From Mizuhopecten yessoensis (lineage: Eukaryota): a stretch of DNA of 64,000 nucleotides. Location of the stretch: NCBI RefSeq assembly GCF_002113885.1, contig NW_018408897.1:543151-607150 (forward strand), read 5' to 3'. Below the pieces are notes generated by a model. The model saw only the letters and a program-made list of their open reading frames with translations, was not told where the DNA came from and ran no database searches. Below are positions 5,148-57,660 of the stretch, piece by piece. Positions within the stretch are counted from its first letter, which is position 1. Every line of letters begins with the position of its first letter. The translations under genes were made by a program, and so were the position numbers.

Positions 5148-5164
5148 GTAAGTAGTCAGGGTGG

Positions 5165-20509: not shown

Positions 20510-20519
20510 TCAGCGTGAT
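20510..20519 (-). CDS. Tentative terminal coding exon of the 2DBD-NR (R-S-R-stop), followed by a long 3'UTR
   Basis: Good acceptor (tgttatgttttcatag) about 1 kb after the phase-2 donor gives ag|a tca cgc tga. This is inference only. Confidence 0.4.
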
Positions 20520-21537
20520 CTATGAAAACATAACATAAATAGCGAATATGAAAGAAATGGTGTTAAAATAAACAATCACCTGTATCAACAGTAAGTTTGA
20601 ACCGATATCTATGGAGAGTGTTAGGTAAGTTTAAAGCTGATCTAGTGGAGCGTTGTATGTATCAAACTACAATGCGTAGTGGATCTCAACATTAAGTCAA
20701 ATGAACTTTCAAATATGACAGATGACATGTGGCTGTCAGTTATGGGGATATCCTTTTTTAATATAAGTTTACCTTATTCAGTGAAAACACCCATGTCATA
20801 ATTATGCATATGAATTTAACCTTGATATGACCTATTTTAACCTCATCAAATGTTTAATAGAATCGTCCCCTATCTTGAAGTTGACATGACAATCTCCAAA
20901 CCAAGGGTGATGTGTTTGGTTGTCTAACTGGAGGCTCTGCCAAGGGTTAAACAACCAAATTATCACCCAGATAGTTGGCGCTTCTCTGCTGCACCTTCAA
21001 GTGGGGGATGATTATTTTTCTCCCATCCTATTACTTCAGTCAAAACTCTACCGACAGTATTATAGCATGAGTGTAAACAAAAGCATATGTGGCGTTTCAA
21101 TATCAGCATTAACTTTTTATGACATCAAAATTTAGTGCATGCAATTCTGCACAAGGTTATCTCCCCTTAGTGGGTAACATGTTTATCATTTTTGGCTAAA
21201 AAATTTATAGCAATATCCCATAAAATCTTGAGCACGTGAAAAAAATGGTCTGAAGTCTGTTTCCTTGTCATGAATCTTGTACAAATGTTCCACTTTTGCT
21301 TACCAGATACAGGCTAAAGTATAACATTCTTAAATTTATTCATCAATCTCATATACAATGAAAACGCATGTAAGATCTTATACCTGTGGTACATATTGTC
21401 AATAAGATGCACTTTTATGAGGTGCTGTCCGTGACTAGAGTAAAATCTCCATAGTATTTTTTTCGTACTTACATACATATTTAGTAAAAATTGTCTTTAG
21501 AATGAGGTTTACAATGGACAGTAACAAGAATACATAC

Positions 21538-22774
21538 CTGCTAAAACCATCTGTGGTACTGGTGTAGGTAGGGCTGGGGTGGAGCCGGGGCATGCTACCG
21601 GGGAACTCTGCCTTGATGACCGCTGGGTACTGTTGGCAGTCGGTGTGGATGGGCTCCTGTGGTGGAGGGGAGTACTGACAACTACTGTGGGGGGAGTCAG
21701 GATACATACAGTTAGAGCTGGGACTGGAAGGGTACTGGGCTGAGTGGACCGGGGAGCTATGGAATTGTGGCCCACTGTAGTGAGGGGAGTTGGCTGGGGA
21801 GCTCATGTACTGAGAAGTACTGCCTGGAGACCCAGGACAGGGGTTACTGGGGGAGGGGCAGTACTGACTTGTACTGCCTGGGGAGTGGGGATAGATGGGA
21901 CTGTGGGAGGGGGAGTTCATCTGATATTGGGTAGGATTGATGGGAGAATCTGAAAAGTTGGGTGAGTTTGGGTACTGTACACTGGTGGAGGAGGGGTCGG
22001 GGTATGTAGGGGAGGTGTGGTCAGTGGTGGTCTCCACAGGCATGTGCTGTGGTGGCACTGGACATCCACTCCTGTCCATCATACAAGGGGAGCGGGTGGG
22101 GAAGTTGTTAGGGTAGTAGTTGAAGTTTTGCTGGGGCTGTCGGGGGGTGGTGCAGGGAACTTTGTCCTGAGCCTGGATCGTCTGTTCTGTCTGGAGGTAG
22201 TCCAGAATTTCATCCATTTCTTCCTCCATGAAGGAGAGAGCAGAGGGCTGGGCTGTTGGCTGGTTCTGGCCCATGTTACTGGAAGGAATGGGTGCTGCAC
22301 AGGGGGTCCGGGCTGAGGTGGAGGAAGTGATTGGGGCATGCCAGTTGTTGATGGAGGTGGAGGAGGAGGCAGGGGTGGTCCAGCAGGGGGCTGCCTGGCT
22401 ACAGTGGGAGGTGTTACTGCCCATAGAGCAGTGGTCAGACATGGGGGTCAGTTGGGTATATAGCAGATCTGTGGGCATGGACATCCTCTTGGTGTCTGTC
22501 TGCTCACAGGCTGAGTCATGGGATTCTGTCTTGATCTTCTTGCTTGCCAACAGGAAGCCAATGTAAGATGGTTCGTCGACAGACTTAGAGTCTGATTCGT
22601 GCTGGGACATGGGTGAGCCTGCTCCACTGTCGTAGGAGGAATGAGGAGACATCTCACTCAGGGAGGAGTGAGGACTGTTGCTCTCCTCAGACAGGTCAGA
22701 GAGGTCAGCACCAGGTGAGCATGACAGAAGGCCATCACTGTTATCTGACTTCTTGGGACGACCCATCTTGATGG
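21538..22774 (-). CDS. 2DBD-NR large exon: C-terminal extension (AIKMGRPKK) and Ser/Pro/Tyr-rich low-complexity region
   Basis: Acceptor tcattgcag, then 1237 nt of GC-rich open frame to donor cag|gtatgt. GMSREAIKMGRPKK resembles the NR1-type T/A-box. Confidence 0.9.
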
Positions 22775-23212
22775 CTGCAATGACAATTCAATATTTCACA
22801 AATGTGGTATACTGAGAGAAAAACCAAGTCCTGCCAGGGTATGAGATCCTGTCAGGGCCTTGTACTCTTAGCTGTATTGGGACTACTACAAACCCTAAAT
22901 AGCCCAACAGTTACAACCTCCATATACATATACAATTCCTTTCAGGGCCTTACCAACTTAAATATTTTATTCTTAGACAATATGGAAGTCCTTCCATGCA
23001 GGGCCCTAACCCTGGTAGCCATACATGTACATACAGGGATAAAAAACAATTTGTCTACATCCATGCTTACCATCTGGAGAAAATGAATAGAAAGTCAAAG
23101 TGTCTGTGGCAGCGCTATATCCTGTGACATAGACCAGCTAGGTATAAGGTTGTCACCATGGTGTCCTGTATACTGAGACAGATCATAAAAATGTCTCCCT
23201 TAAGCTAATTAC

Positions 23213-23354
23213 CTTCTCTGGACATTCCGACAGTGATACATTTCTGGTAGCGACAAAAGCGACAGTTGTTCCGATTCCGCGGATTGATGGTACATTTCTT
23301 ATCTCCCTTGCAGACGTAGCTCTGGTTCTCAACCAAACCACGTCGGAAGAATTT
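23213..23354 (-). CDS. 2DBD-NR exon: second zinc finger of DBD2 (KFFRRGL...CRFCRYQKCITVGMSRE)
   Basis: Acceptor tttttcacag and donor aag|gtaatt; 142 nt. Confidence 0.95.
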
Positions 23355-23539
23355 CTGTGAAAAAAGACATAACCAAATGATAGACATTGTATCCAATAGA
23401 TTAAGATATTTATTTTGTTTAAACTTGCAATCTAGGAGACCAGGACATGAGAACGGTTATGAAATTGTCCACTAAAACTGACATAACTATATTGTTTATA
23501 TGATAAAATGTAGACATAATTTAGACTATGGAACCAGAC

Positions 23540-23646
23540 CTTGCATCCTTCACAGGTGTTGACTCCAAAGTGGATGCCGTTGGCAATGTCTCCACACACC
23601 TTACACAACACCTGGCCCTCTGCTGGCTGGACTGTCTCAGGCTTTT
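23540..23646 (-). CDS. 2DBD-NR exon: linker and first zinc finger of DBD2 (KPETVQPAEGQVLCKVCGDIANGIHFGVNTCEGCK)
   Basis: Acceptor tgtattacag and donor aag|gtctgg; 107 nt, phase 1 in, phase 0 out. Confidence 0.95.
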
Positions 23647-23936
23647 CTGTAATACAAAGCTTACATTAACTCACAAAATAAAACTTTGGCTTCGCTATAG
23701 AGGAGGAATAAAATGATTACTTGCTCACGGGAAGAAACAGCTCACCTCACACATAGGAACATGAAGCTCACTTCCCACCAAACAACAAGCTTTAATTACC
23801 TCATAAAATAGGTGTAAATACAAAAACGTTTCCCTTTTCCAAACATACCAGTTTACCTCTAAAAGATATCAAATGCTATTTTACCTCTGAAAAATATAAA
23901 AATATAATACAGCGTTATCATGATCGTTTAGCTTAC

Positions 23937-24081
23937 CTTTACGGCACATTCCTGCCATAAGGCATCGCTGGTAGCGACAGTATTGGCACCGAATGCGGCC
24001 CTGTTTGGCGATGTCACAGTTTCCGTTGCACTGGCAGGTGAAGGTCGGCTCACCCTCCTTGGTGCAGCGGATGTAAAAGCT
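23937..24081 (-). CDS. 2DBD-NR exon: second zinc finger of DBD1 (SFYIRC...CQYCRYQRCLMAGMCRK)
   Basis: Acceptor tatttacag and donor aag|gtaagc; 145 nt, phase 0 in, phase 1 out. Confidence 0.95.
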
Positions 24082-24984
24082 CTGTAAATACATCAACAAT
24101 AAATATGTAGTCCTGGTAATTATCAAAAAATCAGGTAATTAACAAAGCATCAAAGTATCATTCTCACAAAAAATGTCTGCTGGCTTTTCCTGGCAAATTG
24201 TTCATAGCTTAAGTTTTTTATGATGACAGGATTTTTTTGATTTTTATCAAGACAAATTGTGTATTACTAACGAGGATTTCACTTTAGGTCAATAAAAAAA
24301 AAACCATTAATCCACTGAAAAAGTAGTTGTGATTTAAATATTTACAGCTAATACTCATCCAAACAAAGAGTTAGTATACTGATGTATATCAGTTTACATG
24401 TTAGTTATAGTAATCCTTGATTAGCTTGTTTAAACCATAATTGCAAGCTTAGTAAATTTTGGTATCCACGATAAATTGAAATATGCAAGTGCATTTAGGC
24501 AATGGAAGAAGAGAACATTATGGTGAACTTGAACCGCCATTGCCCAGTGCTGTCTGATGTCTGTGTTGTATATAGTCCGGACTCTGCGAGTGGTTTACAC
24601 TCAGTTCTGTATATGTCACATGTTACTATGTAATAATTGTCTCCCTTTATAAGTTTTCTGATCTAGAGAAATACTGCCTGATCAGTGAAGTTGTAACTAA
24701 ACTGAAGCCTCCAGTATCAATGTTTACCATCAATGCTTGATCACCCACCACTGTCGGTATCTATTTTACAGATAATCACCTAATTGGAAATGATATATTC
24801 AGTAAAACTGGTTTAGGGTATATTCCAAGTAATTGTTGAGTATAGGTTTCATAAATATATAAATGAACATCAGTTTATTTTCCTATACAGAATCTGTATG
24901 ATCCTCTACAGCAGACATGTTATAAAACAATACATACAAGTACACCTATATGAAAGTTCGGCTATAGACATCACATGTTTAACA

Positions 24985-25190
24985 AAATATATTAGCTCCG
25001 TAACACCATTTCAATTTCTGATCAATCCAATACTTATCAAGTCTGTTTTTTAAATGTATGTATTGATGGTGCTGAACACTTCCTCTGGAAGACCGTTCCA
25101 TAATTTTACTACATGTAGGGAAAGAAAGTTCTTCCTTATTTGAATGTTGTGGATTATTTTTTTTGGAATGCCCTTTGTACAATGTCGAGG
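24985..25190 (-). mobile_element. CR1-type LINE ORF2 3' fragment, frameshifted
   Basis: KGHSKK...WNGLPEEV...KNRLDKYWIDQKLK is recoverable across frames. Confidence 0.65.
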
Positions 25191-25362
25191 TAATGGTTGT
25201 ATTAATTAATGGTTAATTAGGTTACTCTCAGTAATGGTTGTTTTAATTAATGGTTAATTAGGTTACTCTCAGTAATAGCTGTATCAATTAATGGTTAATT
25301 ATGTTACTCTCAGTAATGGTTGCATTACTTAATGGTTAATTAAGTTACTCTCAGTAACGGTT
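25190..25362. repeat. ~41-bp minisatellite (gtaatggttgtattaattaatggttaattaggttactctca)
   Basis: About 4 copies. Confidence 0.85.
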
Positions 25363-25440
25363 GAGAAAAAGTCATGCCTCGTTTATCAATGACTGGTGAG
25401 AGTATGTACATGACCACCTGTATATTGACATGTATCAGCA

Positions 25441-25840
25441 ACTTGTGCCCAGTGTACACGTACAGGTGGTGTACTTGTGCCCAGTGTACACGTACAGGTG
25501 GTGTACTTGTGCCAACAGTGTACACGTACAGGTGGTGTACTTGTGCCCAGTGTACACGTACAGGAGGTGTACTAATTACACAGTTTCTCCCAAACTGTTT
25601 CACTAAAGTTTAATTTAGTGAAACAGGTTGGGAGAAACTGTGTAATTAGTAGACCACCTGTACGTGTACACTGGGCACAAGTACACGACCTGTACGTGTA
25701 CACTGGGCACAAGTACGCCACCTGTACGTGTACACTGGGCACAAGTACAGGTGGTGTACTTGTGCCCAGTGTACACGTACAGGTGGTGTACTAATTACAC
25801 AGTTTCTCCCAAACTGTTTCACTAAATTAAACTTTAGTCA
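25441..25840. repeat. 32-bp minisatellite with central inverted block (large palindrome)
   Basis: Unit acttgtgcccagtgtacacgtacaggtggtgt; inverted at ~25603-25749. Confidence 0.9.
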
Positions 25841-26262
25841 CAGAAAACTATCTGTAAAAACCAACAAATAATTTCCCCAGAGATAAGTAATGTCTCTACC
25901 CTAAACAGTACAGTTATCGTGGTGCTGGCCTTAGCTACACCTTGACAATTCCTGATTCGAGTAAATGTATGTCTACCTGTATATTGATCCAGTACTTAGA
26001 TCAATGCCAGGGCTCTTAACGTACAAATCAATGGCCTTTATAAAGACGGTGATAATGAATATACATGGAGTACCTTGTGGATTTCACAATACAGTGTCAA
26101 CACTTGTGTCAACACGTCTCAGTGTTATTGTTACACAGCAAAGACACGTTCAGAAAAAACACTCTCAATGGACCATATGGTAATTCCACATTTACTTTTT
26201 TTCTGAGTTAATAATATGTGGATACGGCAGCAATATTCCCTCCTTATGTCTGTATAAGACAC

Positions 26263-35400: not shown

Positions 35401-36230
35401 TTTATGACAAAGAGTCTCAGGTCTGCTCTGAGCTGGGGTCCTTTTTCAACTTCTTTTGATATCGACAATAAAGCAACAAAATGTGTTTAGAGTTACTTCC
35501 CTTGTTGAGGGATACACCTGTCATTTTGATGCTGTGCATGTATACGTCCTGTAAAACAACATTGATAAAGTAAATGATTGGCAAATAGGAGATCAGCCAC
35601 TGAAGTTTTTGCTTTTGCATATTTTGAATTTTGTTTTCAAATACTTTTTGTTGCTCCACGTTGCTGAATTAGTGAGTGAGTCCCAGATATAATTGCATTG
35701 CTGGAAAATCTAGCATGCCAGTACTGTATTATTTTCCCCTCATTTTCCTTGGCTGCAGTATGTGCAGATACAGGTGTTGTATTGGTATGTGTTTGCACAT
35801 GTCTTCAGTTTAACTATAATAAGTGTTATGACTACAGTAACAGATAACACTGGTACAACTTTTCACCAAAATCTTCAGAAATATTCAACAATGTATCTCC
35901 CTTCTCAAACAAGACTAAACAGCAAGGGTAAGTAGCAGCACGTGGAGCCCAGGTCCACTTGTATGCAACAGTTACCTCTGTCATACATCAAATAAAAGTC
36001 GTCCGGTTTGTTTGTAATTTGCACAGGAAACCACACACCCGCTGTATGCAGACCTGACCCCAATTAATACCCCCAAGAATAGATTACCTTCAGCACTTTC
36101 TTAAATTAGAGCTCACACTGTAATTTTAGGCATTTTTCATAAATAAACATTAAAGAAAGAAGATCATTTTCTCTATTACTAGCTTCAATATCTTCTCTTG
36201 AGCAGGCCATGTTCTCAAACTGTGTGCCTG

Positions 36231-40770: not shown

Positions 40771-40870
40771 TCTAGCGTTATGTACAATTTGTGAATTCCT
40801 TCGATAAAACACAGGGTAATGGGAGAGGTCGAAGAGATAGCTCTTAGCTTGAATGTGAATTGGTACTTAC

Positions 40871-41049
40871 TTTGCATGGTAGACAGACCAGGGCACCGAA
40901 ATAGTAGCCGGAGGCCTTTTCTCCACAAACTACGCAGATTTTCTCATCTTTGTCGTCGTCCAGTAAACACTCGTCACTAGCTTCTACTTTAATATCAGCG
41001 GGGAAACCCACGTCGTTGTCAAGTTTGGATGGAAAGTTGTATGAGGATG
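40871..41049 (-). CDS. 2DBD-NR exon: first zinc finger of DBD1 (ICVVCGEKASGYYFGALVCLPCK)
   Basis: Acceptor tttttatttcag and donor aaa|gtaagt; C-X2-C-X13-C-X2-C pattern. Absent from the ORF track in this frame. Confidence 0.93.
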
Positions 41050-43780
41050 CTGAAATAAAAACAAGTGTTCTGATAAAAATCAGTCAGAAAAATAGATTAT
41101 GGATGAACACAAAGTGATAATGATATGAACATTTTTAGATATCAAACAATCATACAAGTACCAAGTACTTTATATAGAAAACACCTACAACTGGCAATAA
41201 AAAATTGTTGTCTCGCTTGCCTAACAGCTCATCTGATGAACCCAATATCATACACCCTAATAATGTCAGCATGTCTGAAGTCCAATCATAAAATCATAAA
41301 AGTTTCTATAAACTGCTTGTGTGAACACGATAACACATGACTTGTCAAATGTATATGCACACGTTTTATCTAAATGTGGAAATAAAACTAGATAAATCAA
41401 TTTCCTCAGTTATCTGTCATGCAAATTCTAAAAGTGGCCATTAACACTCAATGAATGCTATCCCATCAAGACACATTTTAATTCAGATTTACAGTTTTTA
41501 CCCGTGTCTGCTTGTTACAGTCATGGATACATCCATGTAATGAAAATTAAATATACCCAAAATTTTGATAATAATCCATGGCTTATTTTCATTTTTAGTC
41601 ACAAATCTGAGGCTTATTTTCAAAACCATCTTATTTTCAAGATTGTCTTATGAATGAAGCCATTTAGACAGTAAGTAGTGTGCAGTTTATTTTCAATGCC
41701 ATCTTATTTCCAAGACCATTTAGGTGGTAAGCCATGTGGGGCATGCTATCTTGGCTGTTTTACTTTTGAAGCCTTTTAGATGGTGTTAAGTATGTTTTTC
41801 CATGACCTTTTTGGCTATGGCTGTCCCCAATTATTACATTTCTTTGTGCCATCATTACATTGCATTTATCATCCTTAAAAAAAACCTCAAAAATTTTCAT
41901 TATCCATTTTCAAGGCCTGCAAAGACTTATTTCTTAATGCCAGCCTATTTTCAAATCAGACAGATTATCAAGATTTTAGAGTTTAACATAAGGAAAAGAA
42001 CTGTAGACTGTAACTGTTACAGATAAAAAAATATTGTATCCATCTGGTGATGACAGAATATCACATTTATCTGGTGATGACAGAATATCACATTTATCTG
42101 GTGATGACAGAATGTCGTACATTATGTATTAATCTGTTGACGACAGATTATCATATTCTATAATACTGTCATACCTCAGTACAATTAAAGATAGAATTCA
42201 ATATTTGTTTATATGATTTAAAGAAAATACCACTTCTGGAGAGACAATATTTCAAGACATTTATAAAAACAAACATTTCAAATAAAAATTATAAAACGAT
42301 TTTATTGTGTTGTTTAAAAGACTGTCACGTCTGAGGCCCTTATCAACCGATGTGTTTTAGTTACTAATGTAATGAATGAATTTAATAATATTTTCACTTT
42401 GCCCGGGTTGTTAGTTTAATGAACAAATGACTAACCATGTTCATGTTTATGTGGCAAGCCTACACTGTAAGGAAAAAAATATTGGTTATGTCAGAAATCT
42501 GGCACCATCCCAGTGACCAGCTAGACTGGACTATCAACCTAGGACCAAAATGTCTCAAGAGCATTATTCCTTGAGTAGGTTTGGACAACAGTGTACACAA
42601 TACACATCATTTAGCTGGCTTTACACTCAATAGAGTAATCCCTATCAATCCAGATTACAATAGGCAAACACAGAGAGATTACATCAGGTAAAAATAGCAT
42701 GGAATATGGTAAACCCGTGAATCATACACCAAGGGACCGTCATAGAAATCAAAGAAACTCTAAATGTGAATGTTTGTAATTCATATTCAAAACAAAATCA
42801 GCCGTAACATTTCATCATGAAAACTTTTTTTATCAAAAAAGTCACTGTTTGTGTTAAGTGTTTTTTTCCCTATCTGAGGTTTTGGTTTGTGGAGTTGAAC
42901 ACCTGTAAGGAGGACACCAAGACAGGATGGTCCGCCCACATACACAGATTTACGGAGGGGAACCTGATCTGTAGTGAAGAGTTGTAATGAAGTCAATAAG
43001 TCTACAAGTAACCTGATACAATTATTTACAGACCAACTTGGTTTTTCCAACACCTGTAGATTTCTTCTATCAGGCAATCCTTTCAATTAAAAAACACACA
43101 AGAAATGGAGCTTTACCGACATAAAAGATATAAAGCTTTACCGACATAAAAGATATAAAGCTTTACCGACATAAAACCAGGTACAGGAATACAAAAACAC
43201 ACTCACAGTATATAACCCACACAAACATATAAAAAAAAATACAAAATATTAGACCTCTTCTACTTACAAAACATTACCAAGATTCACCTCCTTCACATAC
43301 AAATATACCAAAACACATATAACATATATATATATATCTCTTACAAAAATGAATACAAAAACACACCCCAGATAGATCTCTTTGACATACATGTACAAAA
43401 TTACATGTAACAATGACCTTTTTAATAACAACACACATACAAGGCAGCTACATGTAGACCACTGTTGACACACAAAATATATATCTTTACTTACATACAA
43501 AATATAAGCAATATAATCACTCTACCATAAACAGAAATCACTTAGGAGTACAACTCCTCACCACACAATTATGTTACCAACACATCTTCCTGAACATTCA
43601 CATGCAGATTATAATAACAGACACCTTAATTTGTTTAAATAAATGCTCATAGTTTTCTTTTTCTAAAGCAAAGACATACCAAAATTAGATTAACCTATAA
43701 AAACCAATACCTATTGGATCATGATCCTTCACTAAGCATTTAGTATCAGGTGGAATATTTATCCCCTGGACTGACGACAT

Positions 43781-44975
43781 TGGCCTCAGAACCAACTCAA
43801 CACTTACGCCCTTTGTGGCCTCAGAATTCACTCAACACTTACACCCTTTGTGGCCTCAGAACTAACTCAACACTTACACCCTTTGTGGCCTCAGAACCAA
43901 CTCAACACTTACACCCTTTGTGGCCTCAGAACTAACTCAACAATTACACCCTTTGTGGCCTCAGAACCAACTCAACAATTACACCCTTTGTGGCCTCAGA
44001 ACCAACTCAACAAATACACCCTTTGAGGCCTCAGAACCAACTCAACAATTACGCCCTTTGTGGCCTCAGAACTAACTCAACACTTACACCCTTTGTGGTC
44101 GCAGAATTAACTCAACACTTACACCCTTTGTGGTCGCAGAACTAATTCAACAATAACACCCTTTGTGGCCTCAGAACTAACTCAACAATTATGCCCTTTG
44201 TGGCCTCAGAACCAACTCAATACTTACACCCTTTGTGACCTCAGAACTAACTCAACACTTACACCCTTTGTGGTCGCAGAACTAACTCAACAATAACACC
44301 CTTTGTGGCCTCAGAACCAACTCAACAATTATGCCCTTTGTGGCCTCAGAACCAACTCAATACTTACACCCTTTGTGACCTCAGAACTAACTCAACACTT
44401 ACACCCTTTGTGGCCTTAGAACTAACTCAACACTTAAACCCTTTGTGGCCTCAGAACCAACTCAACACTTACATTTGTGGCCTCAGAACCAACTCAACAC
44501 TTACATTTGTGGCCTCAGAACTAACTCAACACTTAAACCCTTTGTGGCCTCAGAACTAACTCAACACTTAAACCCTTTGTTGCCTCAGAACCAACTCAAC
44601 ACTTACATTTGTGGCCTCAGAACCAACTCAACGCTTACATTTGTGTCCTCAGAACTAACTCAACTCTTAAACCCTTTGTGGCCTCAGAACTAACTCAACA
44701 CTTAAACCCTTTGCTGCCTCAGAACCAACTCAACACTTACATCTGTGGCCTCAGAACCAACTCAACACTTACATTTGTTGCCTCAGAACCAACTCAACAC
44801 TTACATCTGTGGCCTCAGAACCAACTCAACACTTACATCTGTGGCCTCAGAACCAACTCAACACTTACATCTGTGGCCTCAGAACCAACTCAACACTTCC
44901 ATTTGTGGCCTCAGAACCAACTCAACAATTACACCCTTTGTGGTCGCAGAACCAACTCAACACTTACGCCCTTTG
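43781..44975. repeat. 35/32-bp minisatellite (tggcctcagaaccaactcaacacttacaccctttg)
   Basis: 35-bp units grade into a 32-bp variant towards the right end. Confidence 0.95.
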
Positions 44976-46804
44976 TTGTTAACAAGTCTCATTTTTTTAA
45001 TCTTTGTGACTTGATCAACTGATATAGAGGTCGTAACGACCTTGGCTGACCAGTAGTGAGAGGGACAGAGTGGTACACACTCCCCATCTCATGGCCTACC
45101 AGGTTTAGGGATTTTAATGGCCATATTTACCTCCAAAGATGTCATGCCACCATCAAATTAAAAACAAACAGGCGAACATTTTAAACATGTGACGTTCCAC
45201 ACTGTAGCTAGTACATTAATAATCACACCAGTTCAATCCAAATAGATTTAGTTTAATGCTAAATTAAATGACTTTGAACACAGGTGTAAACACTGCAGGT
45301 AGGTTCACTTGTTTTGAGTTAAACATTTAAAATGAATAGCATATACATCTGTAATCAGGAGAATTATGATAATATAACACAAAGACCTCAATAAATTAAA
45401 ATTAACTTGTGATATACATGTAGCAATGGTTTTATATAATTATACCTGTCAGGTAATCATTACATTCATGTATTAATTACTCTAGGGACACAAAGCAAAA
45501 TAATATAGCTGCATCTTTATGTTTTGAGATGATGGCAAGATTATTTTTTTATTCAAGTTGTAACTGATTTAACAAGAGGCCACTTATCTTGTTTTTTTTC
45601 TAAATGTAACGCTCCATTGTGAACTACTCTTTTTCAAATTACAAACAATATATAAAACAGATTTGTTTTCAATAATAATAAAAAAAAATTTATCAAAGAC
45701 GAAACAAATAACTGCCTCCCGCAGTTTTAGTTAAAATATGTCATTTATCTTTCGCCAGAATTGCTTACCACAAGGAAAAGAACAAAAGTAGAAAGTCCCT
45801 CAGTATACATTAATATGAGTTGGAGAAATCTGATCAGGGTGGTACACTCACCCTCTCACATGTGACTGAACAATAAGAGTCAACTGGAAATTAATATACA
45901 TAAAAATCAAATACCGTAACGACCTTAACACCAGAACTGTGTCGATCAGAGAGTTCAGCAGAGACTAGGATCGCAAACCTAGCTCATCGAGTTATGTCTG
46001 AACCCTCACCGATTCCACCGTAAACCAGGAATGTTTAGTTGGCAGTCTGCGAGTGTTCGGAGACACTTTGAGAAGGGAACCATACATAGAGGGAAGAATG
46101 GGTTAAACTTTAGGGTTCATCACTCTGCCTCTCCCGCGTGGTCGAAATACAGGAAGGCTTGATGTCAATGTTTCAATGGCCTAGCACTTAAAGGTCAGGC
46201 CAGACACTTAGTACATGATATCAGTTGGGTACGGTGTCAAAAATGGTGTTAAATAAACCACAGCCACTGGTAATCCTACGGCCCGATTATTTCTGTGTGT
46301 TAACAATCTGCAGTTGTCAGCTACCTAAACATTTATCTATCAAAAACATATTCATAATTGGTTTGTTTGGTTCAATTGAGTGTTTGATTTGTGTTTTAAA
46401 AGTCCTTGTCGAAAATTTGTTTCAAAACGTTTTGGCATAGATAGTACACTTAATGTTGATATCATCAAATTATATTTGTACTTTCCTTTATATCATAAAA
46501 AGGATGATATTTGCCGATTTTATAACCACTATTCATCACCAATGAATTATTCATTTAATTTTGATATTGTTACAAGCTTGAATTAATTGGTTAAGCTTTT
46601 TAGATTTCTACATTAAAAACATCCCCTATAGATTTATATCGATTTGGACACTATTTACAGTCAAACCAATATGTTGAATTTCTATTTAATCAACAACATG
46701 CATTAACAAATAGACCAATTTGTTAGTGATTCCAGCAAACAGGATCAGCATGCAGTAGAGAATGGTAGCCATGGTGTAGTAGGAAAACACAGCGAGAACA
46801 AACT

Positions 46805-47540
46805 TCCTCATGCTCTGTGTTTTTATGTACAACATGTAGCTCTTCATGCTCAGTGTTTTTATGTACAACATGTAGCTCTTCATGCTCGTTGTTTTTATGT
46901 ACAATATGTAGCTCTTCATGCTCGTTGTTTTTATGTACAATATGTAGCTCTTCATGCTCGTTGTTTTTATGTACAATATGTAGCTCTTCATGCTCGTTGT
47001 TTTTATGTACAATATGTAGCTCTTCATGCTCGTTGTTTTTATGTACAATATGTAGCTCTTCATGCTCGTTGTTTTTATGTACAATATGTAGCTCTTCATG
47101 CTCGTTGTTTTTATGTACAATATGTAGCTCTTCATGCTCGTTGTTTTTATGTACAACATGTAGCTCTTCATGCTCGGTGTTTTTATGTACAACATGTAGC
47201 TCTTCATGCTCGGTGGTTTTGTGTACAACATGTAGTTCTTCATGCTCGGTGGTTTTGTGTACAACATGTAGCTCTTCATGCTCAGTGTTTTTATGTACAA
47301 TATGTAGCTCTTCATGCTCGGTGTTTTTGTGTACAACATGTAGCTCTTCATGCTCGGTGGTTTTGTGTACAATATGTAGCGCTTCATGCTCGGTGGTTTT
47401 GTGTACAATATGTAGCTCTTCATGCTCGATGTTTTTATGTACAATATGAAGCGCTTCATGCTCGATGTTTTTATGTACAATATGTAGCTCTTCATGCTCG
47501 GTGTTTTTATGTACATTATGGAGCTCTTCATGCTCGGTGT
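46805..47540. repeat. 36-bp minisatellite (tcttcatgctcgttgtttttatgtacaatatgtagc)
   Basis: About 20 copies. Confidence 0.95.
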
Positions 47541-48095: not shown

Positions 48096-48217
48096 TCTAG
48101 CCTTTAGATAAAATTTAAGAGAGGGAATCCACACCTTCAATGAGAGTCTAAAAAAAAAGGTATATGTGTAGGGCATCATTGTAAGAGGACTGACCAAACC
48201 TGGGCAGCTTACCCGTG

Positions 48218-49245
48218 GGTGCCCTCCTTGTAAGGAGAATGGCTAAACTCAAACATGTAAGCAGGACATCCTCCTTGTAAGGGAAAATGGCTAAACCAGA
48301 ACATGTGAGCAGGGTCCCCTCGTTGTACGGGAAAATGGATAAACCCAAACATGTGGGCAGGGCACCCTCCTTGTAAGGGAAAATGGCTAAACCATAACAT
48401 GGGAGCAGGGCACCCTCCTTGTAAGGGAAAATGGCTAAACCAGATCATGTGTGCAGGACACCCTCCTTGTAAGGGAAAATGGCTAAACCAGATCATGTGT
48501 GCAGGACACCCTCCTTGTAAGGGAAAATGGCTAAACCAGATCATGTGTGCAGGACACCCTCCTTGTAAGGGAAAATGGCTAAACCAGATCATGTGTGCAG
48601 GACACCCTCCTTGTAAGGGAAAATGGCTAAACCAGAACATTTGAGCAGGCCACCCTCCTTGTAAGGGAAAATGGCTAAACCAGAACATATGAGCAGGGCA
48701 CCCTCCTTGTAAGGGAAAATGACTAAACCAGATCATGTGTGCAGAGCACCCTCCTTGTAAGGGAAAATGGCTAAACTCAAACATGTGAGCAGGACACCCT
48801 CCTTGTAAGGGAAAATGGCTAAACCAGATCATGTGTGCAGGACACCCTCCTTGTAAGGGAAAATGGCTAAACCCTAACATGTGAGCAGGGCACCCTCCTT
48901 GTAAGGGAAAATGACTAAACCAGATCATGTGTGCAGGGCACCCTCCTTGTAAGGGAAAATGGCTAAACTCAAACATGTGAGCAGGACACCCTCCTTGTAA
49001 GGGAAAATGGCTAAACCAGAACATGTGAGCAGGGCAGCCTCCTTGAAAGGGAAAATGGCTAAACCAGAACATATGAGCAGGGCACCCTCCTTGTAAGGGA
49101 AAATGACTAAACCCAAACATGTGAGCAGGGCACCCTCCTTGTAAGGGAAAATGACTAAACCCAAACATGTGAGCAGGGCACCCTCCTTGTAAGGAAATGG
49201 ACAAAACCTAGATATGTCCAAAGGGCACCCTCATTGTAAGGAATT
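48218..49245. repeat. 48-bp minisatellite (caccctccttgtaagggaaaatggctaaaccagatcatgtgtgcagga)
   Basis: About 21 copies. Confidence 0.95.
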
Positions 49246-50214: not shown

Positions 50215-52185
50215 TACAGACAGTCGAATAGATATATACAGACAGTTTAACAGATCCCTATAGATGCAGACAGCCACTATATACAGACAGTCACCAGATA
50301 CAGACAGCCACTATATACAGACAGTCACCAGATACAGACAGCCACTATATACAGACAGGCCACCAGATACAGACAGCCACTATATACAGACAGTCACCAG
50401 ATACAGACAGCCACTATATACAGACAGTCACCAGATACAGACAGCCACTAGATACAGACAGCCACTAGATACTGATAGGTCACTAGATAGGCCAGACAGC
50501 CACTATATACAGACAGCCACCAGATACAGACAGCCACTAGATACAGACAGGCCACCAGATACAGACAGCCACTAGATACAGCCATTAGATACAGACAGCT
50601 ATTATATACAGACAGGCCACCAGATACAAACAGCCACTAGATACAGCCATTAGATACAGACAGGCCACCAGATAAACCCAGGCCACCAGATACAGATAGC
50701 CACTAGATACAGCCAGATATTATATACAGACAGCCACCAGATACAGACAGACACTAGATACAGCCATTATAGATACAGACAGCCACTAGGTACAGCCATT
50801 AGATACAGCCAGCTATTATATACAGACAGCCACCAGATGCAGACAGCTACTAGATATTGATAGGCCAGACAGCTACTATATACAGACAGGCCACCAGGTA
50901 CAGACCGGCCACCAGATACAGACAGGCCATCAGATACAGACAGCCACTGGATACAGCCATTAGATGCAGACAGCTATTATATACAGACAGGCCACTAGAT
51001 ACAGACAGCCATTAGATACAGACAGCCACTAGATACTGATAGGCCACTAGATAGGCCAGACAGCTACTATCAACAGACAGGCCACTAGGTAACAGACAGC
51101 TACTAGATACTGATAGGCCAGACAGCTACTATATACAGACAGGCCACTAGGTGACAGACAGCCACTAGACACAGTTATTAGATACAGACACAGACACTAG
51201 ATACAGACAGACCACAAGATATAGACAGGCCACTAGGTACAGCCGTTAGATACAGACAGCCACTAGATACAGCCATTAGATACAGACAGCCACTAGACAC
51301 AGCTAATAGATATAGACAGCTACTATATACAAACAGGCCACCAGATACAGACAGCCACTAGATACTGATAGGTCAGACAGCTACTATACACAGACAGGCC
51401 ACTAGGTAACAGACAGCCACTAGACACAGTTATTAGATACAGACACAGCCCCTAGATACAGACAGACCACAAAATATAGACAGGCCACAAGATATAGACA
51501 GGCCACTAGGTACAGCCATTAGATACAGACAGCCACTAGACACAGCTATTAGATATAGACAGCTACTATATACAAACAGGCGACCAGATATAGACACAGC
51601 CACTAGACACAGCCATTAGATACAGACAGCCACTAGACACAGCTATTAGATATAGACAGCTACTATATACAAACAGGCGACCAGATATAGACACAGCCAC
51701 TAGACACAGCCATTAGATACAGACAGCCACTAGATACAGCCATTAGATACAGACAGCCACTAGGTACAGCCATTAGATACAGACAGCCACTAGATACAGA
51801 CAGACACTAGATACAGACAGACACTAGATACAGACATTAGTGACAGGCAGCCACTAGATACAGACATTAGTGACAGGCAGCCACTAGATACAGACATTAG
51901 TGACAGACAGCCACTAGATACAGCCATTAGATACAGACAGCCACTAGATACAGCCATTAGATACAGACAGCCACTAGGTACAGCCATTAGATACAGACAC
52001 AGCCACTAGATACAGTCATTAGATACAGACAGCCACTAGATACAGCCACTAGATACAGCCACCAGATACAGACAGCTACTATATACAAACAGGCCACCAG
52101 ATACAGACAGCCACTATACACAGCTATTAGATACAGACACAGCCACTAGACACAGCCATTAGATACAGACAGACCACCAGATATA
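50215..52185. repeat. Complex ~13-17-bp minisatellite (agatacagacagccact)
   Basis: Long degenerate tandem array. Confidence 0.92.
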
Positions 52186-53027: not shown

Positions 53028-54375
53028 GGGAATTGATCAGGAACACAAGAAACCTGGTAATAGTTATTGGGAACTGATCAGGAACACAAGAAACCTGGTC
53101 ATAGATATTGGGAACTGATCAGGAATACAAGAAACCTGGTATTCGTTATTGGGAACTGATCTGGAATACAAGAAACCTGGTAAAAGATATTGGGGATTGA
53201 TCTGGAATACAAGAAACCTGGTATTAGAAATTGGGAACTGATCAGGAACTCAAGAAACCTGGTAATAGATATTGGGGATTGATCTGGAACACAAGAAACC
53301 TGGTACTAGATATTGGGGATTGATTTGGAACACAAGAAATCTGGTACTAGATATTAGGGATTGATCTGGAACACAAGAAACCTGGTAATAGATATTGGGG
53401 ATTGATCTGGAACACAAGAAACCTGGTAATAGATATTGGGAACTGATCTGGAACACAAGAAACCTGGTAATAGATATTGGGAACTGATCAGGAATACAAG
53501 AAACCTGGTAATAGTTATTGGTAACTGATCTGGAATACAAGAAACCTGGTAATAGATATTGGGGATTGATTTGGAACACAAGAAACCTGGTATTAGATAT
53601 TGGGGATTGATCTGGAACACAAGAAACCTGGTAATAGATATTGGGAACTGATCTGGAATACAAGAAACCTGGCAATAGATATTGGGGATTGATCTGGAAT
53701 ACAAGAAACCTGGTAATAGATATTGGGAACTGATCAGGAATACAAGAAACCTGGTAATTGATATTGGGAACTGATCTGGAACACAAGAAACCTGGTAATT
53801 GATATTGGGAACTGATCTGGAACACAAGAAACCTGGTAATAGATATTGGGGATTGATTTGGAACACAAGAAATCTGGTACTAGATATTGGGGATTGATCT
53901 GGAACACAAGAAACCTGGTAATAGATATTGGGGATTGATTTGGAACACAAGAAACCTGGTATTAGATATTGGGGATTGATCTGGAACACAAGAAATCTGG
54001 TACTAGATATTGGGGATTGATCTGGAACACAAGAAATCTGGTACTAGATATTGGGGATTGATCTGGAACACAAGAAATCTGGTACTAGATATTGGGGATT
54101 GATCTGGAACACAAGAAACCTGGTACTAGATATTGGGGATTGATCTGGAACACAAGAAATCTGGTACTAGATATTGGGGATTGATCTGGAACACAAGAAA
54201 CCTGGTAATAGATATTGGGAACTGATCAGGAATACAAGAAACCTGGTAATAGTTATTGGGAACTGATCTGGAATACAAGAAACCTGGTAATAGATATTGG
54301 GGATTGATCTGGAATACAAGAAACCTGGTAATAGATATTGGGAACTGATCAGGAATACAAGAAATCTGGTACTGG
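53028..54375. repeat. 41-bp minisatellite (gaacacaagaaacctggtaatagatattggggattgatctg)
   Basis: More than 30 copies. Confidence 0.95.
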
Positions 54376-55695
54376 AGACAAGAGATATATCATTTATAAA
54401 AAATTCTGCTGACATTTTACATGTTATCAAACATCCAGTATTCCTGTTGACCTTTTTGACTTGAACTTTGTACTTTAAAAAATGCAGTTTGATCATTAAT
54501 AACCCAATGTTTGTGTATCTAAGTCATCATACCCTGAATAAAACACTGAAAGGAAGAAAACAGTTTTAACAATATCACAGAATAATGAAATACAAAACAA
54601 CGGTTATAACAGATAGAAAATCAATGTGTTCCTTTTTCTCCTTGGAGATTTCAAAAGGTAACGGAATGGTTTGTCAATATTCATGTTGCCTTCACTAGCA
54701 TCCAATGACGTATTTTACACTGCAAATGAAAAACAAATCACCAACTGCTTGACTAAAGCTGTCAGGTCAATGTTAGCATAGATCTAAATACAGCAACTGG
54801 GATGGCGCCCACATCAAGGTGTGCATCTGATTAAGTCAGACAATTCCTAACAGTCTAGTCCTTTATGAAGTAATATAAAAAAGGCAATAAAGTCACAAAT
54901 TCTCTCATAGGATCACAAGCTTCGATATTTCTCATTTGACTGATAATAAAACTAATCTAAACAACAAAACCAATATTGTGGTTTTAATATCTCTAACTTC
55001 AGATTTCTAATGGTCTTATATTAGGGAAAACTAAAAAGGCCCTTAGATTAATTTGACAGAGGAATTTAAACTCTTTAACTGCAAACTGTTTGTCAGTGTT
55101 CAAAACTCTCAGCTAGGAAATGAAGATCTTGTACATGCCATCTTTAAATATCTCCTAAATCTTAAAATACTCTTCAAAATCATACTGAATTAAAAATCAT
55201 AGTTCTTGTTGAAACTTGAATATTTATGATAACAAATTGTACGTCATTGCCTCTACAACTGAGACAAAATCAATAGTAAGCTTGTAATGAATGGAGTAAT
55301 AAATGGATCTCATTTACAATGTTATAGAGACAGGAGAGAATACAGGTGGGGAGGGTAGGCCCAACAGTACAACAACACCTAAACTGTAAACCTCGGCCGA
55401 TGGACCGGCGTTCTTACGTCATGCTCTATAATTCAAATGACCATGATACAGGTGGGATTTAAATATTTAAGCAGAAAAATGCTCAATAGAGACAGGAAGC
55501 AGAATTTAATTCCATACATTCAAAATCTAATTCTTGAGTTGTCAGATAGAAGAAGTTAAATGAGATTATAATACACATTTGTAAAATTCCACAGGAAGTC
55601 AGCATGCTTGTGTAAATATTGGAACACAGCTCCAGGTGAGAGAGAGGTAAATCACAATCCTACCTAGATAAGGTTGTTGAGGAGTAACACAGCTA

Positions 55696-56552
55696 GCTCA
55701 GGTACAACCTCGTTACTCAGGTACAGGTACAACCTCACAACCCAGGTACAGGTACAACCTCGTTACTCCGGTACAGGTAAAACCTCACAACCCAGGTACA
55801 GGTATAATCTCGTTACTCAGGTTCAGGTACAACCTCGTAGCTCAGGTACAGGTATAATCTCGTAGCTCAGATACAGGTATAACCTCACAACCTAGGTACA
55901 GGTACAACCTTGTTACTCAGGTACAGGTATAACCTCACAACCAAGGTACGGGTACAACCTCACAACCCAGGTATAGGTATAACCTCGTTACTCAGGTACA
56001 TGTATAACCTCACAACCCAGGTATTGGTACAACCTCGTTACTCAGGTACATGTATATAACCTCCCAACCCAGATACAGGCACAACCTTGTTACTCAGGTA
56101 CAGGTACAACCTTGTTACTTAAGTACAGGTACAACCTTATCACCCATGTACAAGTACAACTTCACAACTATTTTACAGGCACAACTAAGTTACTGAGGTA
56201 CAGGTACAACCTCGTTACTGAGGTTTAGGTACAACCTCGTTACTCAGGTACAGGTACCTTAGGTACAGGTACAACCTCGTACAACCTCATCACTCACGTA
56301 CATGAACAACCTCACACCTAAGTTACAGGCACAACTAAGTTACTGAGGTACAGGTACAACCTCGTTACTTAGGTACAGGTACAACCTCGTTACTCAGGTA
56401 CAGGTACAACCTTGTTACTTAAGGACAGGTACAACCTTATCACCCATGTACAAGTACAACCTCACAACTAAGTTACATGCACAACTAAGTTACTGAGGTA
56501 CAGGTACAACCTCGTTACTTAGGTACAGGTACAACCTCGTTACTCAGGTACA
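55696..56552. repeat. 25-bp minisatellite (caggtacaggtacaacctcgttact)
   Basis: Tandem copies with alternating variants. Confidence 0.92.
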
Positions 56553-57518
56553 CTCTTCAAAACTTATGTATAAGTACACAGAAGCTCTCTAATGTAATGT
56601 CATGTGCATCTTCCTGTCACCAAGTTTGCTAATATAAAGTATTGGGTACAGTACTGTCACTCCAAATCACTGAAGTAATGTCTAGTGAATCTCCAAGTCA
56701 CAAAATTCACTAGTGTTGTTATAGTTCACTAATTCAATTTCCAGTGAATCTCCCAGTTGCAGAGTTGACAAATTTAATACCCAGTGAACCATGAACAAAG
56801 ATTACCATTTAATGTCTAGTAAAGTACAAAGTTTACTATTGCAATATACTGTATATCTAGTAAATGTTCTGATCACAGAATTTATTATGTATTATATTGT
56901 ATCTGCAGGTCTAATGTCCCGTACTGGAATGTATAGACATCTGTCTCATTAACCTAACAATACAGCATTAGAGTATCATCAGGAACCCAGTGTAAAGCAG
57001 AATCCAGTATAATTGACACCTCAACTGTTTATTTAAAAAGTTTATAAACTGAAATCTGTATAATTCAGAATTCTGTATAATTCAGGAATATGTATACTTC
57101 AAACATCCTTATACTTCAAAAATCTATATAATTCAAAAATTTGTATAAAACTATAGTTAAACTTATATTATTATCTAAGTCCTGACTGAAATAATTGATT
57201 CAACCACTATCTAACCTGATAAGCTTTGAGTTCATTTGTGTGACTTTCTTAATCTTAGGGAACATTAAAGATTGTAACTGTTGGTAAGGTTTGTGCCAAT
57301 CAGAAGTTTACAGAATTTATATGTTAGAAATGACCTCATTTCGTGTCTATCAAAGAGATAAGATAGAGAGGTAATTTCATGATGAAATACCCCACTCAAT
57401 TACCGTCCCAAACAACAGTGTTCATAGCTCAGTTTACATCCAAATACAAACAGACTATACAAGGAAACATAAAACAACCTGTCTATATCCTAGAGGTCAA
57501 TCAACAACTCAAACTTAC

Positions 57519-57660
57519 CTGGGTAGTAATGGGAGATGGACGTCCTCTTCTTAGGGAAGTAGTAGGGCGAAAAGAAATGGTGATGATGATGATGAGACAG
57601 GGGCAGATGTCTATGATGGTAGGCCCCTGTCCAGACGGGCTGCTGTACCAGGCAATCCAT
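57519..57660 (-). CDS. 2DBD-NR first coding exon (MDCLVQQPVWTGAYHHRHLPLSHHHHHHFFSPYYFPKKRTSISHYYP)
   Basis: ATG lies in an accATGg context with an open frame to donor cag|gtaagt. The 142 nt length gives phase 1, matching the next exon. Absent from the ORF track. Confidence 0.72.

What the first reader, a model, noticed from the sequence alone, without database searches (positions are those of the whole stretch)
20510..57660. Nuclear receptor with two DNA-binding domains and apparently no ligand-binding domain
Seen: exons hidden from the ORF track join in frame into His-rich N-terminus / DBD1 / 17-aa linker / DBD2 / T-box GMSREAIKMGRPKK / ~400 aa low-complexity tail. After the phase-2 donor at 21537 I find no exon encoding LBD helices in the ~10 kb before the convergent Dispatched-like gene, and the nearest good acceptor (20520) stops after 3 codons. 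Known: 2DBD-NRs (first described in Schistosoma mansoni, also found in molluscs) are described as 2 DBD + 1 LBD, whereas LBD-less receptors (NR0A, knirps-like) have one DBD. Inference: this may be a 2DBD, LBD-less, ligand-independent factor that reads a bipartite element as a monomer. Alternative: the LBD exons lie left of the window, with the whole Dispatched-like gene nested antisense in an intron, which would also be notable.
Basis: partly seen in the sequence, partly recalled or inferred. Interest (0 to 1): 0.88.

Follow-up and report, generated by a model that had tools for sequence, protein, structure and literature searches.

The report
Scallop two-DBD nuclear receptor without LBD
The Yesso scallop copy of the nuclear receptor 2DBD-NRB1 really makes an mRNA that encodes two DNA-binding domains and a long disordered tail but no ligand-binding domain, and four scallop genera share this conserved truncation while other bivalves keep the domain.

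Summary
On the minus strand, seven exons (57660 to 20510) encode a 653-aa protein: His-rich N-terminus, DBD1 (P-box CLPCKS), a 17-aa linker, DBD2 (CEGCKK), the T-box GMSREAIKMGRPKK and a 406-aa Ser/Pro-rich tail. It is identical to Mizuhopecten yessoensis XP_021378725, listed as My2DBD-NRB1 by Wu & LoVerde 2023.

- **mRNA:** spliced contigs from four studies join 21538 to 20519. The frame stops after three codons and a UTR of at least 1.8 kb follows. No other joint leaves this donor.
- **No LBD sequence:** two LBD profiles find all five LBD-coding pieces in the oyster orthologue's locus. They find nothing in this window or in the Pecten, Argopecten and Ylistrum loci with 10 kb downstream.
- **Conservation:** all four scallop genera share the donor, the acceptor and the C-terminus GFSRSR. 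Ka/Ks of the tail exon is about 0.11, and 0.01-0.05 at its end.
- **Other bivalves:** the Solemya, unionid, mussel, oyster and pearl-oyster orthologues keep the LBD.

The best reading is an old LBD loss in scallops that left a working, ligand-independent factor. The far-left-LBD alternative is very unlikely. The gene is catalogued, but I found no paper saying it lacks an LBD. Monomer binding to a bipartite site is inference.

The parts
57519..57660 (-). Exon 1 coding part: ATG at 57660, His-rich N-terminus (47 codons plus 1 nt), donor CAG|GTAAGT
   Evidence: Sequence read. It equals residues 1-47 of P0001. The P. maximus orthologue aligns at L001 10001-10141. The contigs extend about 265 nt beyond E2, which fits this exon plus a 5'UTR of about 120 nt.
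40871..41049 (-). Exon 2: A/B region and first zinc finger of DBD1, with P-box CLPCK(S)
   Evidence: Pfam zf-C4 positions 1-25. The loose end at 24081 in runs X6 and X10 is the reverse complement of 40871-40900.
23937..24081 (-). Exon 3: second zinc finger of DBD1
   Evidence: Pfam zf-C4 positions 25-69. Joint 23937|23646 in the contigs of 4 runs.
23540..23646 (-). Exon 4: 17-aa inter-DBD linker and first zinc finger of DBD2 (P-box CEGCKK)
   Evidence: Pfam zf-C4 positions 2-28. Joints on both sides.
23213..23354 (-). Exon 5: second zinc finger of DBD2 and start of the T-box (GMSRE)
   Evidence: Pfam zf-C4 positions 20-70. Joints.
21538..22774 (-). Exon 6: rest of the T-box/CTE (AIKMGRPKK) and the Ser/Pro-rich tail, ending at the phase-2 donor AGCAG|GTATGT
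   Evidence: Ka/Ks 0.10-0.12 among three scallops. AlphaFold pLDDT below 50 except for one helix.
22191..22238 (-). Conserved acidic amphipathic motif LSFMEEEMDEILDYLQ (residues 418-433). It is the only confidently helical element of the tail and a candidate activation or co-regulator contact motif.
   Evidence: Translation. Conserved across bivalve orthologues (alignment columns 500-516). Helix 420-435 with pLDDT about 72. The function is inference.
18720..20519 (-). Exon 7, the terminal exon: coding 20519-20510 (last base of Arg651, then Ser-Arg-stop), followed by a 3'UTR of at least 1.8 kb
   Evidence: Joint 20519|21538 (skips 1018 nt, GT..AG on the minus strand) inside contigs of 3875-3923 nt in three runs (X1, X5, X6) and in a shorter contig in X10, four studies in all. 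The exon is followed for 1800-1828 nt. It is 76% identical to P. maximus and 72% to A. irradians over 1.7 kb. The acceptor TAG|ATCACGCTGAG is conserved in four scallop genera.
18575..18765 (-). High-copy repeat with a B-box-like GGTTCGAGACC (probable SINE) in or at the end of the 3'UTR. The transcript contigs break here.
   Evidence: (depth up to 14,900 and many loose ends). No tRNA by ARAGORN.
816..10843 (+). Convergent neighbour: Patched/Dispatched-family gene with a sterol-sensing domain. Its last long coding ORF ends at 10843, about 9.7 kb from the receptor's stop codon.
   Evidence: Pfam Sterol-sensing and Patched hits. The same convergent neighbour (1146 aa, PF02460/PF12349) lies 8.9 kb downstream in A. 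irradians L003.

Best explanation
This is the Mizuhopecten yessoensis orthologue of the molluscan nuclear receptor 2DBD-NRB1 (NR7B1; Cg2DBD-delta in oyster). In the scallop lineage it has lost its whole ligand-binding domain. Shown: the mature mRNA joins the large tail exon to a terminal exon that supplies Ser-Arg-stop, giving a 653-aa protein. That protein has an A/B region, DBD1, a 17-aa linker, DBD2, a T-box/CTE and a 406-aa disordered Ser/Pro-rich tail. Its coding sequence has been kept under strong purifying selection in at least four scallop genera. Inferred: without an LBD the protein cannot be regulated by a ligand, has no AF-2, and lacks the only dimer interface shown for a 2DBD receptor (the E/F domain of Sm2DBD-alpha). 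It should therefore act as a constitutive, probably monomeric, sequence-specific factor. DBD2 with its ROR/Rev-erb-like C-terminal extension would bind an extended AGGTCA-type half-site. The tethered DBD1, with the unique P-box CLPCKS, would bind a neighbouring site of unknown sequence. Transcriptional output would come from the tail, through the conserved acidic helix EEEMDEILDYL and three SUMO-consensus psiKxE motifs (IKVE 67, IKTE 319, and the scallop-specific IKAE 625).
For: - **Identity:** 100% identical to XP_021378725.1, which is My2DBD-NRB1 in Table 6 of PMC10497141. The P-box CLPCKS was described for Cg2DBD-delta.
- **mRNA:** contigs of 3875-3923 nt in three runs, and a shorter contig in the fourth, carry the joint 21538|20519, four studies in all. 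The three long contigs also carry the three upstream joints listed, and X10's 2115-nt contig carries at least two of them. The terminal exon is followed for 1.8 kb. No other joint from 21538 is reported. An A. irradians RNA contig (L004) holds the full 649-aa ORF with the same junction.
- **Absence of an LBD:** tblastn with five LBD-bearing orthologues finds nothing. A family LBD HMM (17 sequences) and a broad one (67 sequences) give E above 4 on six-frame pieces of the window. They give E above 2 in L001, L003 and L005. The same HMMs hit five pieces of the C. gigas locus at E 1e-34 to 6e-5, all within 5 kb of the big exon.
- **Loss rather than ancestral state:** Solemya, unionids, Mytilus, Crassostrea, Pinctada and Lingula relatives carry the LBD at 275-351 bits.
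- **Still functional:** Ka/Ks 0.10-0.12 at Ks 0.57-0.84, and 0.01-0.05 in the last 60 codons. DBD-region branch lengths are 0-0.013 in the tree.
- **No hidden fold:** AlphaFold with 38 sequences gives pLDDT 86-96 for residues 80-245 and below 50 for the tail, apart from helix 420-435.
- **Monomer hint:** DBD2 plus CTE is closest to the RORgamma and Rev-erb DBDs. The Sm2DBD-alpha LBD is the homodimer interface.
Against: - The reads were assembled contigs, not raw reads, so a rare LBD-containing isoform would be dropped.
- The runs are only guessed to be RNA, although their intron-free contigs show that they are.
- I could not search the rest of any scallop genome for a displaced NRB1-type LBD. 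Two word-based protein searches with the Mytilus LBD found only mytilids, so they are uninformative.
- DNA binding, monomer state, activation or repression, and SUMOylation are all untested.
- DBD-DBD dimer contacts on DNA could still exist.
Confidence: 0.88

Rival explanations
1. The LBD exons still exist but lie far downstream, left of the window, with the whole convergent Patched/Dispatched-family gene nested in a giant last intron. The 653-aa form would then be only one isoform.
For: The window ends inside or just before the start of the Patched-family gene, so DNA to its left was not examined. Contigs drop rare variants.
Against: - No joint other than 21538|20519 leaves the donor in four studies.
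- The terminal exon carries a UTR of at least 1.8 kb that is 72-76% conserved.
- In oyster all LBD exons lie within 5 kb of the big exon, and the first LBD helices are inside that exon. The scallop big exon lacks them.
- NCBI models in four scallop genera end at the same GFSRSR.
- The same gene order occurs in A. irradians.
Confidence: 0.03
2. The locus is a decaying gene. Loss of the LBD inactivated the receptor, and the transcript is a non-functional remnant.
For: Loss of a major domain is often a step in pseudogenisation. NCBI names such as 'RPB1-like' and 'FLO11-like' show that annotators saw mainly low-complexity sequence.
Against: - The reading frame is intact in four genera that differ by Ks 0.6-0.8.
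- Ka/Ks is about 0.11 over the tail and 0.01-0.05 at the new C-terminus.
- The DBDs are identical or nearly identical to those of LBD-bearing orthologues.
- Splice sites are conserved.
- The gene is expressed in runs from several studies.
Confidence: 0.03
3. The protein is LBD-less but works mainly as a dominant-negative or competitor. It would occupy the response elements of other receptors (for example NR1-type half-sites, via DBD2) and repress, rather than reading its own bipartite element.
For: DBD2 has the common P-box CEGCK and a ROR/Rev-erb-like CTE. psiKxE SUMO-consensus motifs, which are often linked to repression, are conserved. LBD-less knirps-type receptors are repressors (general knowledge).
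Against: DBD1, with its unique P-box, and the 17-aa linker are invariant across bivalves, which argues that both DBDs are used. The conserved acidic helix looks more like an activation motif. Nothing was tested directly.
Confidence: 0.2

Closest known systems
2DBD-NRB1 / NR7B1 of other bivalves (Cg2DBD-delta XP_011428801, Mytilus, Pinctada, Solemya, unionids)
   Same: It is the orthologue. It shares the N-terminal motif MDCLVQQPVWTG, DBD1 with P-box CLPCKS, an identical 17-aa linker, DBD2 with CEGCKK, the T-box AIKMGRPKK, a Ser/Pro-rich hinge with the EEEMDEILDYL motif, and the same exon layout up to the big exon.
   Different: Those proteins are 918-1088 aa and carry an LBD of about 250 aa. 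The LBD is encoded by the end of the big exon plus four further exons. The scallop protein stops at 653 aa, with a new donor and a three-codon terminal exon.
Schistosoma mansoni 2DBD-NRs (Sm2DBD-alpha, -beta, -gamma; NR7A)
   Same: Two tandem zf-C4 DBDs joined by a short linker. Same subfamily (PMC1810520, PMC10497141).
   Different: A different group (A rather than B) with P-box CEACKK in DBD1. They have an LBD that homodimerises, and the scallop protein has none.
NR0A receptors (Drosophila knirps, knirps-like, eagle) and other DBD-only receptors of arthropods and nematodes
   Same: A nuclear-receptor DBD without an LBD, so presumably ligand-independent, with output through a non-LBD C-terminal region (PMC10497141 introduction; general knowledge).
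   Different: Those have one DBD and are not related to NR7 by descent. The scallop protein has two DBDs and lost its LBD secondarily, within Bivalvia.
ROR and Rev-erb (NR1F, NR1D) DNA-binding domains
   Same: They are the best solved-structure matches to DBD2 plus its C-terminal extension (7xvn at 92 bits, 1a6y at 91.5 bits, aligned through the GMSR..GR..KK extension). These receptors bind extended half-sites as monomers (general knowledge).
   Different: The similarity covers one domain only. ROR and Rev-erb have a single DBD and an LBD. No DNA-binding data exist for the scallop protein.

Membership tests
Nuclear receptor superfamily | zf-C4 DNA-binding domain (two C4 zinc fingers, P-box, D-box) | tested here: met
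   PF00105 at 152.6 bits with two full stretches on P0001. Exon-level hits. AlphaFold gives pLDDT 86-96 over residues 80-245. PDB DBD matches at E 3e-25.
Nuclear receptor superfamily | Ligand-binding domain (PF00104, 12-helix sandwich) | tested here: not met
   No PF00104 hit on P0001, P0152 or P0153. Family and broad LBD HMMs find nothing in the window or in three other scallop loci, with an oyster positive control. The tail is predicted to be disordered. Lack of an LBD does not exclude membership, because NR0A receptors also lack one.
2DBD-NR (NR7) subfamily | Two tandem DBDs separated by a short linker of 17-22 aa | tested here: met
   The first cysteines of the two DBDs are at residues 86 and 170, and the linker is 17 aa. 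The 17-22 aa range is quoted in PMC10497141.
2DBD-NR (NR7) subfamily | [quoted passage not shown] | tested here: not met
   Same evidence as for the superfamily LBD row, plus mRNA contigs that stop three codons after the tail exon. By descent it is a member. By the architectural definition it is a truncated variant.
2DBD-NRB1 (NR7B1) orthology group | DBD1 P-box CLPCKS, DBD2 P-box CEGCKK, and grouping with molluscan NRB sequences | tested here: met
   P-boxes read. The protein is 92-94% identical to the bivalve NRB1 second finger of DBD1. It lies inside the mollusc NRB clade (support 100/100), with near-zero branch length among bivalve NRB1 sequences. It is listed as My2DBD-NRB1 in PMC10497141.
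NR0A (knirps-like, DBD-only receptors) | Single DBD, no LBD, grouped by architecture | tested here: not met
   The protein has two DBDs, and by phylogeny it is NR7B. It only shares the lack of an LBD.

The most novel reading that the evidence does not exclude
Scallops carry a natural nuclear receptor made of two DNA-binding domains and no ligand-binding domain. None of the four 2DBD-NR papers I checked for this (the 2023 review with its supplements, PMC4070562, PMC4388693, PMC11589774) describes this architecture. It has been fixed and kept under purifying selection since before the four sampled scallop genera diverged. The LBD of NRB1 may also be dispensable more widely. Haliotis NRB1 keeps only the first LBD helices. 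Several gastropod NRB models show no LBD. The 2023 review silently omits the scallop, Lottia, Haliotis and Gigantopelta NRB1 sequences from its LBD-signature (Ti) list, and the scallop, Lottia and Haliotis ones are also absent from its LBD alignment. If so, the core function of this receptor group is ligand-independent DNA reading by a tethered DBD pair.
Probability: 0.8. Interest if true: 0.6.

Novelty: new variant of a known kind. Interest (0 to 1): 0.55.

Why it matters
All 2DBD receptors have been defined and discussed as two DBDs plus one LBD. Their only tested biochemical property, homodimerisation, maps to the LBD.

A conserved, expressed orthologue without the LBD is a natural deletion experiment. 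It shows that the tethered DBD pair plus the hinge/tail is enough for a selected function. It also offers a simple protein for finding the still unknown response element of this subfamily (SELEX or DAP-seq with one polypeptide, with no ligand or partner to consider).

There are two practical consequences:
- Receptor inventories of bivalves used in ecotoxicology should not count this gene as a possible xenobiotic target in scallops.
- Database names such as 'RNA polymerase II subunit RPB1-like' and 'flocculation protein FLO11-like' are wrong.

The interest is moderate rather than high. Loss of a domain in a nuclear receptor has precedents (NR0A and DBD-only nematode and oyster receptors), and no function has been tested.

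Tried and rejected
1. Word-based protein searches with the Mytilus LBD found only mytilids and not even the oyster orthologue (P0155 whole; P0158 residues 661-918). They therefore say nothing about an orphan LBD in scallops.
2. The first AlphaFold run, with a 9-sequence alignment, failed: pLDDT was 33 and even the DBDs did not fold. It was replaced by the 38-sequence run.
3. I did not run PF00104 itself on six-frame pieces of the window. It would have needed more than 100 typed references, and Pfam misses even the oyster and pearl-oyster LBDs of this family. I used family-specific and broad LBD HMMs with a positive control instead.
4. The 587-aa C. gigas entries looked like a possible LBD-less isoform. 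They are only the big exon read through its flanking introns, so I rejected them.
5. Exact look-ups of Haliotis P0012 and Mytilus P0158 found no contig. P0179 served for Haliotis.
6. Rfam found no family in 10800-21600, and ARAGORN found no tRNA in the repeat at 18.6 kb.
7. The scan's earlier findings held nothing about an LBD elsewhere in this genome.
The joined model was available as the public protein P0001, and Ka/Ks was computed on exon 6 alone.

Full report
**What is there**

The window is Mizuhopecten yessoensis DNA. Exon 6, taken by reference, matches NCBI protein XP_021378725.1 (P0001, 653 aa) at 100% identity. It matches Pecten maximus XP_033734800.1 (P0002, 653 aa) at 84%. The scaffold is NEDP02005570.1 of GCA_002113885.2.

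I read all splice sites on the minus strand:

| Exon | Coordinates | Content |
|---|---|---|
| E1 | 57660-57519 | ATG, His-rich N-terminus |
| E2 | 41049-40871 | first finger of DBD1 |
| E3 | 24081-23937 | second finger of DBD1 |
| E4 | 23646-23540 | linker, first finger of DBD2 |
| E5 | 23354-23213 | second finger of DBD2, start of T-box |
| E6 | 22774-21538 | rest of T-box, Ser/Pro-rich tail |
| E7 | from 20519 | last base of Arg651, then Ser-Arg-stop |

- The phases are 1, 0, 1, 0, 1 and 2.
- The E6 donor is AGCAG|GTATGT.
- E7 reads A TCA CGC TGA, so the protein ends ...TTDGFSRSR and the stop codon ends at 20510, the finding's left coordinate.
- P0001 is exactly this model.
- Pfam zf-C4 hits the two halves of each DBD, and nothing else is found on the whole protein.
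- The linker is 17 aa, the T-box is GMSREAIKMGRPKK, and the 406-aa tail is 20% Ser and 14% Pro.

**Is the short form what is expressed?**

Twenty runs from 13 studies hold exon 6. I laid the contigs of four of them, each from a different study, on 18200-24150.

- Single contigs of 3875-3923 nt in three of the runs carry the joints 23937|23646, 23540|23354, 23213|22774 and 21538|20519. The fourth run, X10, carries the 21538|20519 joint in a 1303-nt contig and the upstream joints in a 2115-nt one. Each joint has GT..AG ends on the minus strand.
- A loose end at 24081 is the reverse complement of the end of E2.
- Intron bins have depth of about zero, so these runs are RNA even though the tool only guesses so.
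- After the acceptor at 20519 the contigs follow the genome for 1800-1828 nt. They break at a high-copy repeat (18575-18765).
- No other joint from 21538 is listed.

Contigs cannot exclude a rare isoform.

**Is any LBD hidden nearby?**

- tblastn with full-length orthologues from Solemya, Mytilus, Crassostrea, Pinctada and a unionid finds the DBD exons and the tail but nothing for their C-terminal 250 aa. This holds both in the window and in the P. maximus locus L001.
- I built an LBD HMM from 17 NRB-type LBDs and a broader one from 67 2DBD-receptor LBDs. I ran both with all filters off against every stop-to-stop piece of 12 aa or more in six frames.
- In the C. gigas locus (L002) they recover five pieces at E 1e-34 to 6e-5. 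These are the last 60 residues of the big exon and four exons within the next 5 kb.
- In the window the best hit has E = 4.8, and it is a DBD exon. In P. maximus L001, A. irradians L003 and Ylistrum balloti L005, each with 10 kb downstream, nothing is better than E = 2.
- There is no assembly gap between the donor and the neighbouring gene.
- AlphaFold with a 38-sequence alignment folds residues 80-245 at pLDDT 86-96. It leaves residues 249-653 below 50, except for one helix at 420-435. The tail is therefore not a cryptic LBD.

**Comparative picture**

- Four scallop genera have proteins of 649-655 aa that all end TTDGFSRSR: Mizuhopecten, Pecten, Argopecten and Ylistrum.
- The donor AGCAG|GT and the acceptor AG|ATCACGCTGAG are conserved in all four genomes. 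The intron between them is 1018 nt in Mizuhopecten, 136 nt in Pecten and 333 nt in Argopecten; Ylistrum was not measured.
- An A. irradians RNA contig (L004, 2428 nt) carries the joined form and the complete ORF.
- A Patched-family gene lies convergent about 9 kb downstream in both M. yessoensis and A. irradians.
- Orthologues in Solemya (927 aa), unionids (1086-1088), Mytilus (918-1012), Crassostrea (1012) and Pinctada (1085) carry an LBD. So does a Lingula relative (893 aa). These LBDs score 275-351 bits on the family HMM, although Pfam misses two of them.
- Presence of the LBD is therefore ancestral, and the scallop state is a loss that predates the split of the four genera.

**Is the truncated gene under selection?**

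- Ka/Ks for exon 6 is 0.10-0.12 at Ks 0.57-0.84 among three genera, and 0.01-0.05 for the last 60 codons.
- In a tree of the DBD region the scallop sequences have branch lengths of 0-0.013 inside the molluscan NRB clade, which has 100/100 support. There is no relaxation of constraint after the loss.
- The 3'UTR is 72-76% identical over 1.7 kb. Four more collinear conserved blocks reach 6 kb past the stop codon.

**How it probably works (inference)**

- The LBD of Sm2DBD-alpha is the demonstrated homodimer interface (PMC1810520). The 2023 review assumes four DBDs per dimer. The scallop protein has lost that interface, together with the ligand pocket and AF-2.
- Among solved structures, DBD2 plus its extension is closest to RORgamma and Rev-erb. 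These are receptors that bind extended half-sites as monomers (general knowledge).
- I therefore propose a constitutive monomer. DBD2 with its CTE would read an extended AGGTCA-type site, and the tethered DBD1 (P-box CLPCKS, unique to this group) would read an adjacent site.
- The tail would supply regulation through the conserved acidic helix LSFMEEEMDEILDYLQ and through the psiKxE motifs at residues 67, 319 and, in scallops only, 625.
- None of this was tested.

**Comparison with the literature**

- Wu & LoVerde 2023 (PMC10497141) list this very accession as My2DBD-NRB1, and the Pecten one as Pm2DBD-NRB1.
- Their text defines all 2DBD-NRs as two DBDs plus one LBD and speaks of the LBD of 'all available 2DBD-NRs'.
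- In their supplements the two scallop NRB1 sequences appear in the DBD alignment. They are absent from the Ti, AF2 and LBD files, whereas the scallop NRA sequences are present there.
- I found no statement that these proteins lack an LBD in that paper, in the oyster, Biomphalaria/Lottia or Lymnaea papers, or through full-text searches. The library holds only open-access papers.

The gene is therefore known and named, but its architecture is not described. I class it as a new variant of a known kind.

**Verdict**

- The main interpretation (LBD-less 2DBD receptor) is supported, at about 0.9.
- The nested-gene alternative is very unlikely, at about 0.03.
- The monomer, bipartite-site mechanism is plausible but untested.
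- Interest is moderate, at 0.55.

Noticed in passing
window 18575-18765: A short repeat with a pol III B-box-like GGTTCGAGACC sits in the receptor's 3'UTR. RNA contig depth there is 1,900-14,900, against 10-370 for the gene, with many divergent loose ends. It is probably an expressed or high-copy SINE. ARAGORN calls no tRNA.
   Followed up: partly
window 14355-18567: Four non-coding blocks are 66-75% identical and collinear with P. maximus (L001 43298-47552). Three of them also match A. irradians (L003 41900-45104, 68-79% identical). They lie between the receptor's terminal exon and the convergent Patched-family gene. They are either a much longer conserved 3'UTR or conserved regulatory DNA. 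There is no Rfam hit.
   Followed up: partly
L006 23218-24996 (Haliotis asinina NRB1, P0012/P0179): The abalone orthologue (845/849 aa) keeps only the first ~55 positions of the LBD profile, at the end of its big exon (18 bits). Nothing more is found in 10 kb downstream. This may be a second, independent LBD truncation, or an incomplete gene model.
   Followed up: partly
P0021 (Physella acuta, 832 aa), P0035 (Nucella lapillus, 967 aa), P0029 (Pomacea, 933 aa): These gastropod NRB-type proteins with two DBDs show no LBD, or only a 14-bit trace, by the family HMM and Pfam. The 2023 review's LBD-signature list also omits the Lottia, Haliotis and Gigantopelta NRB1 sequences. LBD loss or decay may be recurrent in this group.
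   Followed up: partly
P0065, P0015, P0039, P0058, P0063 (representative-library hits): These protein models carry four to six zf-C4 domains. P0065 has six in 875 aa, and P0015 has four plus an aminotransferase domain. They may be fused tandem receptor genes or true multi-DBD proteins.
   Followed up: no
window 25340-25825, 36200-38200, 43750-45020, 46686-47531, 48209-49221, 50264-51990, 53250-54500: The two 16-kb introns of the receptor gene are filled with long tandem-repeat arrays. They show up as periodic pseudo-ORFs on both strands in the ORF list.
   Followed up: no
P0001, P0002 (database names): NCBI names the scallop proteins 'DNA-directed RNA polymerase II subunit RPB1-like' and 'flocculation protein FLO11-like', and UniRef names one 'Retinoic acid receptor RXR'. 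All three are artefacts of the Ser/Pro-rich tail or of generic DBD similarity.
   Followed up: yes
I saw the repeated ORFs there but did not study them.
   Followed up: no
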